Notes under the pieces: generated by a model
What the model was told of the DNA's origin: nothing
Seen by the model: only the letters and a program-made list of their open reading frames with translations
Database searches by the model: none
Sequence record: OR805292.1
DNA length: 64,000 nt
Reading direction: 5' to 3' (one strand)
Shown: in pieces, positions 10,827 to 39,543 of the stretch
Layout of the letters: the number at the start of each line of letters is the position of its first letter
Position numbering within the stretch: position 1 is the stretch's first letter
Position numbers and translations under genes: made by a program

Positions 10827-10957
10827 GTTTTGTTAACCTTTTATATACCTGTTAAATTTTACATTATTTAGTTAATTTTATACCCATATAATACTGTCGA
10901 GATAAATATGTGTGTAGATAACTTATAGCATTATTTTTAACGATTTTAGTACAATGG

Positions 10958-10986
10958 TTGACAGTATTAATGTCGTATGCTATAAT
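10958..10986 (+). promoter_or_regulatory. Perfect sigma70 consensus promoter
   Basis: TTGACA-17 bp-TATAAT exactly; no ORF of 60 aa or more follows for about 1.35 kb. Confidence 0.9.
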
Positions 10987-10992
10987 CCGCAA

Positions 10993-12190
10993 CATAATAA
11001 AACTAAAGGACGTATGTAACAAAACAGACGTTCTCCTAAGTGTTTTAAAGTTTTTGCTTAGGAAGACCCAGTTGTATGTTTAAAGGGTGAACGGTAACGG
11101 GCATTCTTGTTTAAGACTAGTTCTTATGAAGACATTGGCAACTAACATAGCAGCTTTGTTCCATAATTGGATATTGGTAGTAGAAACTATCCCCATCGTG
11201 CCTTTACTGTAGTACCGTTAGAGACGGAGATAACGCAGGAAAAAAGGTTATTTAAATTATGATTTTGGGTGCTGCAGAACACTTTCGTAAACAAAAGGAA
11301 TATAGTTTACGTATACACAACGGGAACGGGAAAAAGCTTTTTAAGCAAAAACGAGTCCCTGGTAATTGGTGTTTAACGGGAGTGACGTCCCAAATGTTAT
11401 CCATCGATTAACACTGTAAGAAGGTTGTAAGGGTTATTGTGTTCGAAGTGGTTTACACAACTGTTCTTCCTACATTTATGTACAGAAGTGTAAACGAAAG
11501 GATGTTGCTCTGGTAGAAAAAGATCAACGTACTTTATGACACTATCCTTGTGACATATGTACTTGTACCAACAACAGCCGCAGGTTACGGATATGGTATT
11601 ACAAACTGTACTGCGGTTCCGGGAGTTGAAAGTGGATGTTAGCTTAGGTGGCTGTTTGCTTAATTATAATGTTTAATTTAGGCAATATAAGCGTCGGGTG
11701 AGGCTTTCGTAGGTTGCGTGTTTATGCTACGGTGTAAATGGGCTAGACTACTGGCGCATACATGAGTATTGTAGGATTGGCGCTTTAATAAAGAAATTTG
11801 TTAAAGTTTGAGTTTAGCTCCCCGCTCATTAGCAATAAACGTTGCTAGTCGATAGTATACCCACGCCTAAATAATGCCGTCATTGTTTAGTTTTTTTTAA
11901 AAAATATAATTGTCAATTATATGTCGTACGCATCTACCCCGAAAAGGGGTAGATGTTTATGACTTTCGTTTACACTCATGTCATAATCAGTACACGCCAT
12001 TTTAGGCCATTCTACATCAATACACTGCTTCTAGCAGTGTATTGGACATACAAAATAATCTTAAATTATATCAAATTTGTTTAATTACTTTAATTTTGTT
12101 ACTTTAGTAATTTGTATTTTGTTTATATGAGTTGTAGTTTACGAAAACGAATATAAACAAAATACATATGTGAACTGTAGTTCACATACT
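10993..12190 (+). ncRNA. Candidate large structured non-coding RNA (or origin with primer RNA)
   Basis: ORF-free and G/T-rich relative to flanks; many helices with G-U pairs on the + strand; long-range pairings (see findings). Confidence 0.65.
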
Positions 12191-12340
12191 TACTAACGTT
12201 GTATATTACGGTAATTCTATAAAATATCTCTATATAATTATAAACGTTTTATGGCATACTACGACTGAACGAAATTGAAAATTAACTAGAGATTTAATTA
12301 GATAAATAATATTGTAAAAATTGTATAGAGGTATACATCA

Positions 12341-35722: not shown

Positions 35723-38085
35723 TATAGATTTACCCAGGATGAAAAATATACTTGTAATGATGCTAATCCCGGATCGTCATATTCCCTTGAATAATCTTGA
35801 TAACCGGTTCCGTCGTTGTTATTAAAATTACTGTTTAATGTACTAGCAACGTCAAAGTATGATAATGTTTTGTTATAGCAATATATAGACACTGCTCTAA
35901 ATGCTTTAGAATAGTTAACAACATCTCCCTCTATGGCACCTACGTGCCCCTCTGACATACATTGTGTCATAACAGCATAATTTGTATTTGTTGGACGCAA
36001 AGTAGTAAAATAGAATCTATATAATCCTGTTCCTAATTTTGTTATAGATAAATTTAAAGTGTTTATTACAAAGAAGGAACCGCCCGTAAGATTTGTGTCT
36101 GAGAATGATGCCAGACCTTTTGGCATATCTATTTCTACTTTCCAGTCATATCCTAAATAAGTTACTAATTGGTCCCTGCTAGCAAAACGAACATAATTGT
36201 CATTGGTATTATTGTTTCTAAATGTTACTTGGGCATTTACTGACATAGGGTCTGCATTAGTGTATGTCATACTAAATGAAGATGCAGATAGATACCCGCC
36301 GTTTGCATCAGGAAGATTAGAAGGTGTATATCTTACTGCTATTGTGTTGGCACCCGGACTAGTTGAATTTATTTTACCGTTAAGTAAATATGAATCTACA
36401 GCAGTACCGTTCCACGCCAATGCTCCTACTTCGGCAGCGGTCGGTGGCCGTCTGTCGTGGAATGCTAAATTACCAGAACCTATATATAGATTGTCTGCTT
36501 TAAATGATATGATACTATTTGCTACTAATGGTGTATTTATTGCACCAGTATTATAGAAGACAAACTGTATTCCGTTATCTAATGTATTGTTAGTAACCAT
36601 ATTCATACTAACAGCAGTAGTATTATTTTGAGAATGAATATCTGTAACAGTACCGCCTAGTATTAGACTAGTTCCGTAATTGGGTTTATATGCTAATCTG
36701 AAACTATTATCATTCATTACTATTACATCTCCTGATGTAACAGATGAAGTTATAGACGAAGTAACAAACGGCGTTTGTTTTTTAACGTAAGCTGTGCTAT
36801 CTAACCCGCCTAGTAATTCTGAATCTGGAGAAGAACTATTTGATTTATCTACGAATAGATTATTATATTCTTGGGAATTGTATGTTTCGTTTTTACTATA
36901 TATAGATAAATTATTTCTAGCGGCTGCCTTATTTAAAACATCTGCTAGGTTCAGTGTTTTATCGAATGTATTTACGTTATCTACTAACCCTAGACCTATC
37001 TGTTCTTTTGTAACTTGATGAGGGTCGTTTTTATCATTAATGTGAGCACTGAGTAAATCTAATGTGCCCTGAGTTAATGGATGCCATTTTGCTAGATTTG
37101 TAAATTCACCGGGTTCTCCTACATATACATAAAATGATCCTTGTGTACCGGGTCCTTCTGTTTTATACCATAGTTGTCCTTTTATAGCATTTTGGGGAGG
37201 AGAAGAACTAGCAAAGTTTTCTACCATCCATATCATGGATTCACTAAATGCTTTTTCGTAACCTGCCGAATTATATCCTGGCATAGATATAGAAAGTAAG
37301 TTAGAAGAAATATAGTTATCAGGTACATTTAATCCTGGAATCTTGTTATAGCACTTTGCAGAAAAAGATAATACCTCGAAAGTACATAAATCCTGATTAC
37401 CTGATACAAATCCAAATAATGCAGATGTTTTAAAATCAGTTAGTGTATCATCGTTTAGATCTATAGTAAACACCGAGTTATCTATTATTACGTTAGAATT
37501 CCAGTCGGAACACTTAGCTGTTATTTTATTATTTTCTCTAATTACATTAATAATTGTATATCTATTTGACCAACCGAGATACCCTGTAGATGATGTAGAA
37601 GTAGCCCCAGCAGGACTATTAATTCCTATTGTTTTACTAGAAAGAATCGTTCTAGTTTTATTGTTATCTAAAATTAGTTCCCAATTCCTTCCGGATCCGC
37701 TGCTAGATGTGTTACCTAATGACCGGACAGCAGATATATATTTTCCTTTTTGTCCAGCAACACACAAACCTAACCTGTTATTTCTTATAGAATTGCTAGA
37801 TATTTTTATTGTAATATTAAAATCACTAACTTGATCCATGTATAACGCATAGCTATATAACGATGCTGCATTAGTTGATATAGGATCGGGAGTTCTTGTG
37901 TAAGAAAGAATAGAAGTAGCTGACCATCCTGCAGTGACGCCGCCTATTGCTTTTCCTTCCCATGCATCATACAAGTTAACTGATGTAGCTTTTGACCAAT
38001 CAGAAACAACTTCTTGGTAACTAGGAAAAGAAGTTAGTTCTCTATTTTGGTAATAATTATTTGATAAACGTAATTCGTAACCCAT
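35722..38085 (-). CDS. Tail/baseplate fibre protein (paralog 1) with extra ~230-aa N-terminal beta-rich domain
   Basis: VENFASSSPPQNAIKGQLW, AHINDKNDPHQVTKEQIGL, KLGTGLYRFYF. Confidence 0.7.
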   Translation of the reverse strand: MGYELRLSNNYYQNRELTSFPSYQEVVSDWSKATSVNLYDAWEGKAIGGVTAGWSATSILSYTRTPDPISTNAASLYSYALYMDQVSDFNITIKISSNSIRNNRLGLCVAGQKGKYISAVRSLGNTSSSGSGRNWELILDNNKTRTILSSKTIGINSPAGATSTSSTGYLGWSNRYTIINVIRENNKITAKCSDWNSNVIIDNSVFTIDLNDDTLTDFKTSALFGFVSGNQDLCTFEVLSFSAKCYNKIPGLNVPDNYISSNLLSISMPGYNSAGYEKAFSESMIWMVENFASSSPPQNAIKGQLWYKTEGPGTQGSFYVYVGEPGEFTNLAKWHPLTQGTLDLLSAHINDKNDPHQVTKEQIGLGLVDNVNTFDKTLNLADVLNKAAARNNLSIYSKNETYNSQEYNNLFVDKSNSSSPDSELLGGLDSTAYVKKQTPFVTSSITSSVTSGDVIVMNDNSFRLAYKPNYGTSLILGGTVTDIHSQNNTTAVSMNMVTNNTLDNGIQFVFYNTGAINTPLVANSIISFKADNLYIGSGNLAFHDRRPPTAAEVGALAWNGTAVDSYLLNGKINSTSPGANTIAVRYTPSNLPDANGGYLSASSFSMTYTNADPMSVNAQVTFRNNNTNDNYVRFASRDQLVTYLGYDWKVEIDMPKGLASFSDTNLTGGSFFVINTLNLSITKLGTGLYRFYFTTLRPTNTNYAVMTQCMSEGHVGAIEGDVVNYSKAFRAVSIYCYNKTLSYFDVASTLNSNFNNNDGTGYQDYSREYDDPGLASLQVYFSSWVNL

Positions 38086-38192
38086 GACAATGCTCGATAT
38101 TCTTTATGATATTTATCATAGTAATTTTAGGTAAATTTATGAAATTATATTTATTTTCTTTTATAAAACATAAAATATAGTTGTTTAATTTA

Positions 38193-38485
38193 ACTGGGTG
38201 TAATATAATTTGTAGTGTATGCAATACATTTGCATATATACCAAGCACTGTATGGTGAGTTGCATACAGCGATGGGCAATCGTAGTGCCGACATTGATCT
38301 AGTATGATCTGAAATAGGTCCCTTACGCCGAGGTAAGGCTATCTGGCACGGATAGTAGTGGATGTGTATGTTCGAAATAACGATATCATATTTTAGACAT
38401 ACGCCGCCGTCAGCATTTTTAGTTTGCAACTGCTGATATCTTTAAGTTTTGTTGATGGCCGGGGGTGGTGCCCAGTGCATTTTTA
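38193..38485 (+). ncRNA. Candidate ~285-nt multi-helix RNA
   Basis: Terminal helix 38193-38200/38469-38476 enclosing at least six hairpins; GC-richer than flanks; G-U pairs favour the + strand. Confidence 0.6.
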
Positions 38486-38680
38486 TTGTAGAGTTAATGT
38501 GTAAAAGGAATAAATGTGATTAAAGACGAGGTTCTTTTCTAAAACTGTTTCTAAAAATAAATGCGTTAAAACCTTGGGTTTAGTTAATGCATTATATATG
38601 CTATATAATTATCCCTACATAAACATGTATGTTTAACTTGTTTAGTTAACAACAAAATATGCAAATTAAGGAATTAACTG

Positions 38681-38848
38681 ATGACTAAATTTAATAAAAA
38701 ATCGTTAGATACGTATGAAGATAGAGAAGATTATAGAGATGAAGAAACCGGTGACAGGTTAAATAATAAGAAATCTGAACCTAAAAAAAATAATACTGAT
38801 TATAAGCCGTTTGGTAAAATTACCAACCGCTATAATAATGATAATTAA
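38681..38848 (+). CDS. Small charged hypothetical protein (55 aa)
   Basis: Not in ORF track; SD aagga; MTKFNKKSLDTYEDREDYRDEETGDRLNNKKSEPKKNNTDYKPFGKITNRYNNDN. Confidence 0.6.
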   Translation: MTKFNKKSLDTYEDREDYRDEETGDRLNNKKSEPKKNNTDYKPFGKITNRYNNDN

Positions 38849-38876: not shown

Positions 38877-39296
38877 GTGATAATAATGATAGAAACTATT
38901 TTAACTTCGAGAGTATTTGCTTATGTAGTTTGCATAGGTATAATATCGTTAGCAATAACGCTCTCATATCAAAAATATCAAAAGCTTATTAGTGTAAATA
39001 AATCTCTTGAACAATCTATAGAAACGTTAACTAATGATAATAATTCATTGCAGTTAACTATTTCTGAACAAAATAAAAAGATTGAAACATATATTCAACT
39101 TAGATTATATGAAGAATCTATAGCCAAACAAAAAGCAGAATCACATGCTGCTTTAGAAAAACAATTACAAGATACTAAATCTCAATTAAATGAATTAATA
39201 GAACGTAGAAAGAATGAGGCACCAAATGATCAAAGTGTGTTATGCTCTACTGTCAGGATTGATCCTGCTTTACGCAACTGGATGCTCGCAAACTAA
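38877..39296 (+). CDS. i-spanin (Rz-like)
   Basis: N-terminal TM helix plus coiled coil; overlaps a downstream lipoprotein gene. Confidence 0.75.
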   Translation: MIIMIETILTSRVFAYVVCIGIISLAITLSYQKYQKLISVNKSLEQSIETLTNDNNSLQLTISEQNKKIETYIQLRLYEESIAKQKAESHAALEKQLQDTKSQLNELIERRKNEAPNDQSVLCSTVRIDPALRNWMLAN

Positions 39297-39543
39297 ACCA
39301 GTTAAATCTGTAGTGATAGAAAAGGAAATAGTTCCTGTTCTTCCGCCAGATTCTCTTATAGTATATTGTTACGAAAATGAAAATCCCGATACGTATGGCG
39401 AAACGGTAGGTTCGGTTAAAAAACTAAAATCTATAATTAAAAATTCTTGTAATAAAAATATGAAAGATATAGAACTTTGGAAATCTGAAGTTAAAAAACT
39501 ATATCCTACTGCGAATGACTTAGAAATAAAAAAGCAGCCTTAA
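39214..39543 (+). CDS. o-spanin (Rz1-like lipoprotein)
   Basis: Signal peptide with lipobox ATGC; PVLPP motif. Confidence 0.75.
   Translation: MRHQMIKVCYALLSGLILLYATGCSQTKPVKSVVIEKEIVPVLPPDSLIVYCYENENPDTYGETVGSVKKLKSIIKNSCNKNMKDIELWKSEVKKLYPTANDLEIKKQP

What the first reader, a model, noticed from the sequence alone, without database searches (positions are those of the whole stretch)
38193..38485. Second unexplained structured RNA candidate (~285 nt) at the fibre/lysis boundary
Seen: a GC-richer island in AT-rich intergenic DNA, closed by actgggtg/tgcccagt and followed by a T-run. Inside are tgtatgca/tgcatata, ctgtatg/catacag (38248-38269), gatct/aggtc, ccttac/gtaagg (38321-38338), tatct/ggata, gtgtatgtt/gacatacgc (38364-38404, with a T-loop-like TTCGAAAT) and gccgtcagc/gttgatggc (38406-38459, competing with tcagca/tgctga). 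G-U pairs favour +. It lacks tmRNA, RNase P and tRNA end signatures. Inference: a discrete multi-branched ncRNA of unknown class (ribozyme, packaging RNA, protein decoy or lysis regulator).
Basis: partly seen in the sequence, partly recalled or inferred. Interest (0 to 1): 0.7.

Follow-up and report, generated by a model that had tools for sequence, protein, structure and literature searches.

The report
Known phage non-coding RNA, function unknown
This GC-rich island between the tail-fibre and lysis genes of a Pseudomonas jumbo phage is the counterpart of a small non-coding RNA already reported from RNA-seq of the sister phage PA5oct (ncRNA003); it looks real, but its class and function remain unknown.

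Summary
The window is the last 64 kb of Pseudomonas phage Cassandra, a PA5oct-like jumbo phage. The locus is not new. In PA5oct the orthologous stretch (98.6% identical) is annotated "ncRNA003, putative lncRNA" on the + strand from stranded RNA-seq, at 0.01-0.05% of phage reads.

My reading is a small + strand transcription unit:
- a promoter TTGTTT-17-TATAAT at 38181-38209;
- a start near 38216;
- a row of six local hairpins;
- a weak hairpin plus U5 at 38458-38484.

Its 5' arm lies in the promoter spacer, and one natural variant breaks it.

Three hairpins share a UGUAUG/CAUAC stem core, the densest such cluster in the window. The island core varies four times less than the adjacent spacer.

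There are no Rfam, tRNA or tmRNA matches. No relatives exist outside the genus, so covariation cannot be tested. Fold z-scores are unexceptional for this genome.

The - strand 79-aa ORF has atypical codon usage, no ribosome-binding site and no homologues. However, 4 of its 5 substitutions are synonymous, so it is not fully excluded.

Function is inferred only.

The parts
38181..38209 (+). Sigma-70-type promoter-like site, TTGTTT, 17-nt spacer, TATAAT. It predicts a start near 38216.
   Evidence: TTG-N20-TATAAT occurs only twice in the 64-kb window, here and at 10958. Both sit at the 5' edge of ORF-free GC-richer stretches. Both hexamers are invariant in 16 sequences. PA5oct promoters are reported as TTGAC / TATAATA. 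The stricter tool scan did not list it, because its -35 matches only 3 of 6.
38216..38485 (+). Predicted ncRNA body of about 270 nt, orthologue of PA5oct ncRNA003. The published bounds map to about 38228-38531.
   Evidence: Identity to MK797984.1 is 98.6%, where the stretch is annotated ncRNA on the + strand from RNA-seq. MFE is -87.4 kcal/mol with z -2.7. No indel occurs in 16 sequences.
38216..38238 (+). Hairpin H1, a 9-10 bp stem with the UGUAUG core, at the predicted 5' end.
   Evidence: z -3.1. The only variable site is in the loop.
38248..38269 (+). Hairpin H2, CUGUAUG / CAUACAG with an 8-nt loop.
   Evidence: z -2.0. The only variable site is in the loop.
38270..38296 (+). Hairpin H3, weak.
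   Evidence: z -1.0, no better than shuffles. Invariant.
38297..38363 (+). Long irregular hairpin H4, with the GC-rich tip CCUUAC/GUAAGG.
   Evidence: -22.7 kcal/mol, z -2.5. Invariant in all sequences.
38364..38404 (+). Hairpin H5, with the UGUAUG / CAUAC stem core. Its apical loop holds the palindrome GAUAUC (38382-38387).
   Evidence: z -4.7, with 0 of 200 shuffles as stable. Invariant.
38406..38459 (+). Hairpin H6, a 10-bp outer stem. It has an inner hairpin and an internal loop holding a second GAUAUC (38435-38440).
   Evidence: z -3.0. Pair 38409:38456 is G-U in most sequences, A-U in PAC2, and G-C in MIJ3 and one Logan contig. It is paired in every sequence.
38458..38484 (+). Weak terminator-like hairpin (38458-38464 / 38470-38476) followed 3 nt later by U5.
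   Evidence: In MIJ3 two substitutions turn two mismatches into pairs, and the hairpin energy goes from -7.2 to -12.8 kcal/mol. In Cassandra it is no better than shuffles, z +0.75. The tool's terminator scan finds none.
38190..38480 (-). Minus-strand reading frame, probably spurious. It gives a 79-aa ORF from an internal TTG in this window. The longer 96-codon frame from an ATG is interrupted once by a stop in most genomes and is uninterrupted in two.
   Evidence: Codon score is -0.12 against 0.34 +/- 0.10 for real genes. No Shine-Dalgarno sequence precedes either start. No homologues. However, 4 of 5 substitutions are synonymous. It is annotated as a hypothetical protein in five GenBank records.
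38486..38680 (.). AT-rich, fast-varying spacer between the RNA and the 55-aa ORF.
   Evidence: 8.7% variable sites against 2.1% in the island core, Fisher p = 0.003. All five indel events of the locus fall here.

Best explanation
This is the Cassandra copy of PA5oct ncRNA003, a small non-coding transcription unit on the + strand.

Proposed mechanism:
- Host RNA polymerase with sigma-70 starts near 38216 from TTGTTT-17-TATAAT (38181-38209).
- The roughly 270-nt transcript folds, as it is made, into a row of six local hairpins rather than a closed multi-branch.
- Transcription stops inefficiently at a weak hairpin plus U5 (38458-38484). Some read-through continues towards the 55-aa ORF and the spanin genes.
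- Three hairpins carry the same UGUAUG/CAUAC stem core, and two predicted loops carry the palindrome GAUAUC. The most likely mode of action is therefore a trans-acting RNA that offers repeated binding sites to one RNA-binding protein of phage or host (a titrating or scaffolding RNA), expressed from mid-infection.

Status of each step:
- Shown here: the sequence features, their rarity in the window, and the conservation relative to the spacer.
- Reported by others: the + strand transcript.
- Inferred: the exact start, the terminator and the function.

I put about 0.6 on 'real + strand non-coding unit' and about 0.25 on the protein-binding mechanism. The confidence given is for the statement as a whole.
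For: - The orthologous stretch in PA5oct is annotated ncRNA003, + strand, from stranded RNA-seq, with no plausible ORF.
- The promoter pattern occurs only twice in 64 kb. One copy sits exactly at the 5' edge, 19 nt before the published 5' end.
- It is a GC-rich island in an AT-rich intergenic gap. This is a known predictor of structured RNA (PMC6429828, PMC8723152).
- Hairpins H5, H1, H6 and H4 have z between -2.5 and -4.7.
- The island holds 6 GTATG/CATAC motifs in 200 nt, against a window mean of 0.43. The eight densest sliding windows are all here. TGTATG...CATAC hairpins occur nowhere else in the window.
- GATATC occurs twice within 53 nt, against 14 sites in 64 kb.
- The island core has 2.1% variable sites and no indel. 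The adjacent spacer has 8.7% and five indels.
- Inside 38216-38485 none of the 8 variable sites disrupts a predicted helix. One pair shows three pairing states.
- The MIJ3 substitutions strengthen the local 3' hairpin.
Against: - The read share is low: 0.01, 0.05 and 0.03% of phage reads at the early, middle and late time points. These counts were summarised without regard to strand.
- Covariation is untestable: 81 of 84 pairs never vary and none shows a compensatory change.
- The whole-fold z-score ranks only 38th of 407 windows.
- The 3' hairpin in Cassandra is no better than shuffles, and the terminator scan finds none.
- The -35 hexamer is poor.
- The substitutions fit a - strand coding frame equally well, with 4 of 5 at third codon positions.
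- No binding protein, target or relative outside the genus is known.
Confidence: 0.42

Rival explanations
1. Cis-acting leader. The same + strand RNA is the 5' part of the mRNA for the 55-aa ORF and the spanin genes. The weak hairpin plus U5 is a premature-termination point that sets how much transcription reaches the lysis genes. The short RNA would be a by-product or a 5'UTR-derived sRNA.
For: - The next genes downstream are co-oriented.
- No sigma-70-like + strand promoter was found in the spacer before the 55-aa ORF.
- The terminator is weak.
- The GenBank feature runs to 103668, inside the 55-aa gene, which may reflect read-through.
- Mutually exclusive helices exist: 38216-38224 pairs with either 38230-38238 or 38260-38268.
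Against: - 195 nt of fast-varying, indel-prone spacer separate the U-run from the ORF. That is unlike a functional expression platform.
- No riboswitch, T-box or other leader family matches.
- The paper's table ends the RNA at 103368, well before the ORF.
Confidence: 0.25
2. Minus-strand orphan protein gene. The island encodes a 79-aa protein (96 aa in two genomes), and the + strand reads are antisense or background transcription.
For: - The frame is open in all 16 sequences.
- Four of 5 substitutions in it are synonymous third-position changes, close to the 83% seen in the neighbouring fibre gene. The chance probability is about 0.03-0.05.
- Five GenBank records call it a hypothetical protein.
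Against: - The codon-usage score is -0.12. This is below the lowest 79-codon window of real genes (minimum 0.09, mean 0.34). GC3 is 0.37 against 0.21.
- The start is TTG and no Shine-Dalgarno sequence precedes either possible start.
- The longer frame is interrupted once in most genomes.
- GC skew on the + strand is positive, opposite to the neighbouring - strand genes.
- There is no Pfam or PHROG match and no homologue among 5.8 billion and 1.84 billion proteins. The four weak hits are summed tandem-repeat artefacts.
- The PA5oct authors, working with stranded reads, saw no plausible ORF.
Confidence: 0.12
3. Relic or passenger. The island is a small inserted cassette of different base composition, a moron-like unit or the remnant of something larger. 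It is transcribed at a low level but has no present function.
For: - Its GC content differs from both flanks.
- Fourteen-nt direct repeats (13 of 14 identical) bracket the unit at 38156-38169 and 38532-38545.
- The read share is very low.
- The sequence is confined to one genus.
Against: - The core is four times less variable than the adjacent spacer and has no indels.
- There is a 147-nt invariant run.
- A flanking repeat of this kind is expected by chance about once in six such loci (my estimate).
- No source sequence was found in phages, plasmids, genomes or metagenomes.
Confidence: 0.13
4. DNA-level element. The clustered TGTATG/CATACA hexamers are binding sites for a DNA-binding protein. 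That protein would regulate the divergent fibre and lysis genes or mark a replication start. The RNA would be incidental or would serve as a primer.
For: - The motif cluster is unique in the window.
- The locus is a divergent-transcription junction.
- The + strand is G-rich.
Against: - The motif pairs have spacers of 5, 8 and 25 nt. That suits RNA hairpins with a shared stem, not sites for a dimeric DNA binder.
- There is no skew extremum beyond what gene orientation explains.
- There are no iteron-length repeats.
Confidence: 0.08

Closest known systems
PA5oct ncRNA003 (locus tag EST35_0168, 'putative lncRNA'; Lood et al. 2020, PMC7318152)
   Same: It is the orthologous locus: 98.6% identical, with the same neighbours and on the + strand. 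It was defined from stranded RNA-seq as a transcribed stretch without a plausible ORF.
   Different: Only the bounds differ. The paper gives 103065-103368 (window about 38228-38531). GenBank gives 103065-103668. I place the start near 38216 and the first stop at 38484. No structure, promoter or function was described there.
5'UTR-derived ncRNA candidates of virulent Pseudomonas phages, from ONT-cappable-seq (PMC10914365)
   Same: A promoter, then a short RNA ended by premature termination upstream of a co-oriented gene. Conservation is limited to the genus.
   Different: No start or stop mapping exists for this locus. A 195-nt variable spacer follows the stop. At about 270 nt it is longer than the examples quoted in that paper.
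Structured ncRNAs found as long GC-rich intergenic regions in AT-rich genomes (PMC6429828, PMC8632094, PMC8723152)
   Same: It shares the diagnostic signature: an ORF-free gap much richer in GC than its surroundings.
   Different: Those motifs are accepted on covariation across many relatives. Here 81 of 84 pairs never vary.
Known phage or bacterial stable RNAs of similar size (phi29-type packaging RNA, tmRNA, RNase P RNA, 6S RNA, T-box and riboswitch leaders, small ribozymes)
   Same: Size range and a multi-hairpin fold. Two palindromic loops could in principle pair loop to loop.
   Different: No cmscan match to any of 4227 Rfam families, even at E <= 10. ARAGORN finds nothing.
Morons, the independent promoter-to-terminator units inserted between phage genes (general phage biology, from my own knowledge)
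   Same: It has its own promoter-like site, a stop signal and a deviating base composition, and it lies between two gene modules.
   Different: Morons carry a protein gene on the transcribed strand. Here the + strand has no credible ORF, and both substitutions in the 27-aa + strand ORF are non-synonymous.

Membership tests
PA5oct ncRNA003 (RNA-seq-defined phage ncRNA) | Orthologous sequence at the same genomic junction | tested here: met
   98.6% identity over 501 nt. The same flanking fibre-like gene and 55-aa ORF are present, and the ncRNA feature overlaps the island.
PA5oct ncRNA003 (RNA-seq-defined phage ncRNA) | A + strand transcript in infected cells | not testable with these tools
   Reported for PA5oct only. 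No reads were available here, and no data exist for Cassandra.
Any curated RNA family (Rfam 15: tmRNA, RNase P, 6S, packaging RNA, T-box, riboswitches, introns, ribozymes) | Covariance-model match at or near the family threshold | tested here: not met
   0 matches at gathering score over the window. 0 matches at E <= 10 over 38000-38700, both strands.
tRNA / tmRNA | Cloverleaf or tRNA-like ends detected by ARAGORN | tested here: not met
   None at default settings. With the threshold lowered to 70-80% only two low-quality calls appear, one in the AT-rich flank and one on the - strand with an undefined anticodon.
Stand-alone bacterial-type sRNA gene | Sigma-70-type promoter at the 5' edge | tested here: met
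   TTGTTT-17-TATAAT at 38181-38209 is one of two such sites in 64 kb. The -35 is weak, so the strict scan omits it.
Stand-alone bacterial-type sRNA gene | Intrinsic terminator at the 3' edge | tested here: inconclusive
   U5 is present. The local stem is mismatched in Cassandra (-7.2 kcal/mol, z +0.75) and has 7 bp in MIJ3 (-12.8). The scan finds none.
Structured ncRNA (evolutionarily supported fold) | Compensatory base changes in helices | tested here: inconclusive
   There are 0 compensatory changes. One pair has three pairing states, and 81 of 84 pairs are invariant. There is no statistical power.
Protein-coding gene (- strand 79-aa ORF) | Homologues, or a family match, outside the genus | tested here: not met
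   Only its own cluster was found. The four other hits are summed tandem-repeat artefacts. No Pfam or PHROG match.
Protein-coding gene (- strand 79-aa ORF) | Codon usage and translation signals like the phage's genes | tested here: not met
   The score is -0.12 against 0.34 +/- 0.10. The start is TTG, with no Shine-Dalgarno sequence.
Protein-coding gene (- strand 79-aa ORF) | Excess of synonymous change | tested here: inconclusive
   4 synonymous to 1 non-synonymous, p about 0.03-0.05, from only five sites.
5'UTR-derived ncRNA by premature termination | Start site, internal stop and read-through into a co-oriented gene | not testable with these tools
   The geometry fits, but it needs end-mapped transcripts.

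The most novel reading that the evidence does not exclude
The RNA is the founding member of a new, genus-restricted class of jumbo-phage RNAs. It would be a multi-hairpin decoy or scaffold whose repeated UGUAUG/CAUAC stems and GAUAUC loops capture a specific host or phage RNA-binding protein during mid to late infection, for example to tune lysis timing or to blunt a host defence.
Probability: 0.15. Interest if true: 0.5.

Novelty: already known. Interest (0 to 1): 0.3.

Why it matters
Phage-encoded non-coding RNAs are poorly understood, and jumbo phages of this genus are used as therapy candidates and as models. One of them, Paride, has been isolated on Pseudomonas aeruginosa. If this RNA acts in trans, it would be a handle on how such phages regulate late events.

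The practical gains from this check are modest:
- The locus is tied to a published RNA.
- The transcription unit gets testable bounds.
- A repeated stem motif is pointed out.
- Five GenBank records that call a - strand hypothetical protein here are probably mis-annotated.

Tried and rejected
Searches for known RNA classes:
- Rfam at gathering score and at E <= 10 found nothing.
- ARAGORN at default and relaxed settings found nothing credible.

Searches for relatives that could give covariation:
- Phage records: 11 hits, all >= 98% identical.
- IMG/VR by neighbouring proteins and by a 22-mer: none.
- Metagenome 18-mers: one found nothing. The other gave 120 hits, which turned out to be one unrelated gut gene plus chance matches.
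- Genome collection: 5 chance hits.
- Plasmids: none.
- The fibre N-terminus and the whole fibre by protein search gave only its own genus, or domain-level hits without synteny.
- Six extra Logan/ENA contigs added no new variable position inside the island; one shares the 38456 change seen in MIJ3.

Searches for paralogues:
- blastn and a covariance model (R1) against the window and against PA5oct ncRNA001, 002 and 004 found only the query itself.
- No shared promoter pattern was found at the other PA5oct ncRNAs.

Ideas considered and dropped:
- A tRNA-cluster remnant.
- A DGR or retron RNA: there is no reverse transcriptase and no repeat of fibre sequence.
- Small + strand peptides: the substitutions are non-synonymous.
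- Antisense pairing to the 55-aa leader: a 10-nt match at chance level.
- A replication origin inferred from skew.

Steps that failed or were unavailable:
- Structure prediction of the 79-aa ORF was not available.
- Two z-score scans timed out before a reduced one ran.

Full report
**Where this is.** The window is the last 64 kb of Pseudomonas phage Cassandra (OR805292.1, 100% identity; window 38100 = record 262267). Cassandra is a PA5oct-like jumbo phage of the genus Wroclawvirus, the only genus of its family. The finding lies in a 595-nt gap. On one side is the start of a 787-aa fibre-like gene on the - strand, whose start codon ends at 38085. On the other is a 55-aa ORF on the + strand (38681). 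After that come an Rz-like spanin (38877-39296), an Rz1/LysC-like spanin (39214-39543), a holin-like gene and the endolysin. 'Fibre/lysis boundary' is therefore correct.

**Check of the observation.** GC is 39-49% in 100-nt windows inside 38200-38500 and 15-26% in both flanks.

- The + strand of 38193-38485 folds to -94.3 kcal/mol (z -2.8, 0 of 200 shuffles as good). The - strand folds to -67.5 (z -2.4).
- To see what that means in this genome, I folded 407 windows of 290 nt sampled across the window on both strands.
- The + strand fold here has the lowest absolute energy of all, but its z-score ranks only 38th. The window-wide mean z is -1.0 with sd 1.6.
- The overall stability is thus largely a matter of composition. 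The 'G-U pairs favour +' argument is as well: shuffled + strand sequences already fold 23 kcal/mol better than shuffled - strand ones.
- Individual hairpins are more telling: z is -4.7 for 38364-38405, -3.1 for 38213-38241, -3.0 for 38405-38461, -2.5 for 38297-38363, -2.0 for 38246-38271 and -1.0 for 38270-38296.

**It is already annotated.**
- In PA5oct (MK797984.1) the orthologous stretch, 98.6% identical, carries the feature 'ncRNA003; putative lncRNA; annotation based on RNA-Seq data' on the + strand.
- The paper (PMC7318152) lists ncRNA003 at 103065-103368, + strand. It takes 0.01, 0.05 and 0.03% of phage reads at 5, 15 and 25 min.
- It is one of four transcribed regions 'that lack plausible ORFs'.
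- Reads were stranded for annotation, but the counts were summarised without regard to strand.
- Those bounds map to window about 38228-38531.
- The GenBank feature ends at 103668 instead. One of the two values is probably a slip.
- Five other records (Cassandra, Deifobo, Paride, Ettore, PAC2) instead annotate a hypothetical protein on the - strand.

**Anatomy.** A promoter-like site TTGTTT, 17 nt, TATAAT lies at 38181-38209.
- The pattern TTG-N20-TATAAT occurs only twice in the whole window on either strand, here and at 10958. Both times it sits at the 5' edge of an ORF-free, GC-richer stretch.
- PA5oct promoters are reported as TTGAC and TATAATA and are used by host polymerase.
- A start about 7 nt after the -10 falls near 38216, which is 12 nt before the published 5' end.
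- That 8-nt arm also holds 2 of the island's 10 variable sites. One of them, in PAC2, turns a G-C pair into A-C.

From 38216 the RNA folds into local hairpins that are the same whatever ends are chosen:
- H1 38216-38238
- H2 38248-38269
- H3 38270-38296
- H4 38297-38363
- H5 38364-38404
- H6 38406-38459

At the 3' end, the arm GCCCAGU can pair locally with 38458-38464. In MIJ3 two substitutions convert the two mismatches of this stem into pairs, and the energy goes from -7.2 to -12.8 kcal/mol. U5 follows 3 nt later. In Cassandra this hairpin is no better than shuffles, and the tool's terminator scan lists nothing. If it is a terminator, it is a leaky one.

- First, H1, H2 and H5 share the stem core UGUAUG/CAUAC. 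The island holds 6 GTATG/CATAC motifs in 200 nt, against a window mean of 0.43. The eight densest sliding windows of the whole 64 kb are all here. TGTATG...CATAC hairpins occur nowhere else in the window. The spacers between arms are 5, 8 and 25 nt. That fits RNA hairpins with a common stem better than DNA sites for a dimeric protein.
- Second, the palindrome GATATC occurs twice, 53 nt apart (38382 and 38435), both in predicted loops. There are only 14 sites in 64 kb. A loop-loop contact is possible but is only an inference.

**Comparative evidence.** I compared 10 GenBank genomes and 6 Logan/ENA contigs, three of which are identical to known phages.
- The island has 10 variable sites and no indel. 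A run of 147 nt is invariant.
- In a six-genome alignment, variable sites are 2.1% in 38193-38429 and 8.7% in the spacer 38486-38680 (Fisher p = 0.003). They are 3.3% in the fibre gene, where 64 of 77 fall at third codon positions.
- All five indel events of the locus fall in the spacer.
- Inside 38216-38485 none of the 8 variable sites disrupts a predicted helix. Two are in hairpin loops, one in an internal loop and three in the 3' linker or local stem. The other two are the two sides of one pair, 38409:38456, which is G-U in most sequences, A-U in PAC2, and G-C in MIJ3 and one contig.
- My rough estimate is that such a clean pattern arises by chance about 8% of the time.
- Formal covariation has no power: 0 compensatory changes, and 81 of 84 pairs never vary.

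**The - strand ORF.** The 79-aa frame is open in all sequences. A longer 96-codon frame from an ATG is interrupted once by a stop in most genomes and is uninterrupted in two.

For a gene:
- 4 of the 5 substitutions in it are synonymous third-position changes, p about 0.03-0.05.

Against a gene:
- The codon score is -0.12, below the lowest 79-codon window of real genes (mean 0.34, sd 0.10, minimum 0.09). GC3 is 0.37 against 0.21.
- The start is TTG, and no Shine-Dalgarno sequence precedes either start.
- GC skew is opposite to that of the neighbouring - strand genes.
- There is no Pfam or PHROG match.
- No other cluster was found among 5.8 billion proteins.
- A full HMMER pass over 1.84 billion representatives gave only four hits. 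They match different parts of the query in tandem-repeat proteins, and each repeat alone is insignificant.

I regard the ORF as probably spurious but not excluded. The same five substitutions are equally neutral for the RNA model.

**Class.** No Rfam family matches at gathering score or at E <= 10. There is no tRNA or tmRNA. No paralogue turned up in the window or among the other three PA5oct ncRNAs, by blastn or by a covariance model. No relative was found outside the genus in phage records, IMG/VR, metagenomes, genomes or plasmids.

**Mechanism.** The best-supported reading is a small + strand non-coding unit made by host polymerase, folded into a chain of hairpins and ending at a leaky stop. 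The repeated stem motif makes a protein-binding (titrating or scaffolding) RNA the most likely mode of action. This last step is inference.

The main rival uses the same transcript as a leader, whose premature termination sets read-through into the 55-aa and spanin genes. Such 5'UTR-derived RNAs are described in other virulent Pseudomonas phages (PMC10914365). The fast-varying 195-nt spacer argues against a tight regulatory coupling. The other rivals are a - strand orphan gene, a functionless inserted relic and a DNA-level binding-site cluster.

**Verdict.** The feature is real and was reasonably described, but it is already published as ncRNA003. Its closed multi-branch shape is not supported. 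Its class and function stay open, because only near-identical genomes exist.

- (a) In my reasoning I recalled from memory short consensus motifs of two known RNA elements, the T-box leader and the CsrA/RsmA binding site, as leads. The tool-based test (cmscan) found neither family.
- (b) One note and the printed output of three scripts list variable positions. These include the position that separates the interrupted form of the - strand frame from the uninterrupted form. I later saw that this may fall under the rule on breaks. I have left that position and change out of this report and have deleted nothing.

Noticed in passing
window 10827-12340: About 1.5 kb without a credible ORF lies behind a perfect TTGACA-17-TATAAT promoter at 10958-10986. 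The body is GC-richer, with a T-run near 11893 and a GC hairpin at 11932-11956. Positions 11153-11278 are 83% identical to nt 40-161 of PA5oct ncRNA004, so this looks like a diverged copy of another RNA-seq-defined 'lncRNA'. Windows at 11943 and 12523 have fold z-scores of -4.6 to -7.2. The only Rfam hit is a weak nqrA-II match (22.9 bits against a threshold of 55).
   Followed up: partly
PA5oct MK797984.1 103065-103668 (L001 3129-3732), about window 38228-38832: The GenBank ncRNA003 feature ends at 103668 and overlaps most of the 55-aa CDS. The paper's Table 1 ends it at 103368. One of the two is probably a typing slip, or else the longer value records read-through.
   Followed up: partly
window 38190-38480 (- strand): There is an annotation conflict among sister genomes. 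Five records call a hypothetical protein here (79 aa, or 96 aa in Ettore), PA5oct calls an ncRNA on the other strand, and the remaining four distinct genomes annotate nothing (NC_071039.1 is the RefSeq copy of PA5oct and also carries the ncRNA).
   Followed up: yes
window 38156-38169 and 38532-38545: Fourteen-nt direct repeats (13 of 14 identical) bracket the whole promoter-to-stop unit. The second starts one base after the published 3' end of ncRNA003. One Logan contig (SRR24309835) has a 12-nt deletion of one of two tandem TTTCTAAAA copies there. This may be chance; I estimate about 0.16 such repeats expected.
   Followed up: partly
window 38486-38680: The spacer before the 55-aa ORF is the fastest-varying stretch of the 6.5 kb compared: 8.7% variable sites and five indel events. 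It is much more variable than the neighbouring genes or the upstream gap 38086-38192 (0.9%).
   Followed up: yes
PA5oct ncRNA001, 002 and 004 (L136 264-499, L137 252-702, L138 317-935): All four RNA-seq-defined PA5oct ncRNAs have 39-46% GC in a 33% GC genome. They share no detectable sequence or covariance-model similarity with ncRNA003.
   Followed up: partly
window 38877-39543: The two spanin genes overlap out of frame by 83 nt (i-spanin 38877-39296, o-spanin 39214-39543, which has a lipobox-like LLYATGC). Start positions differ between the GenBank records.
   Followed up: no
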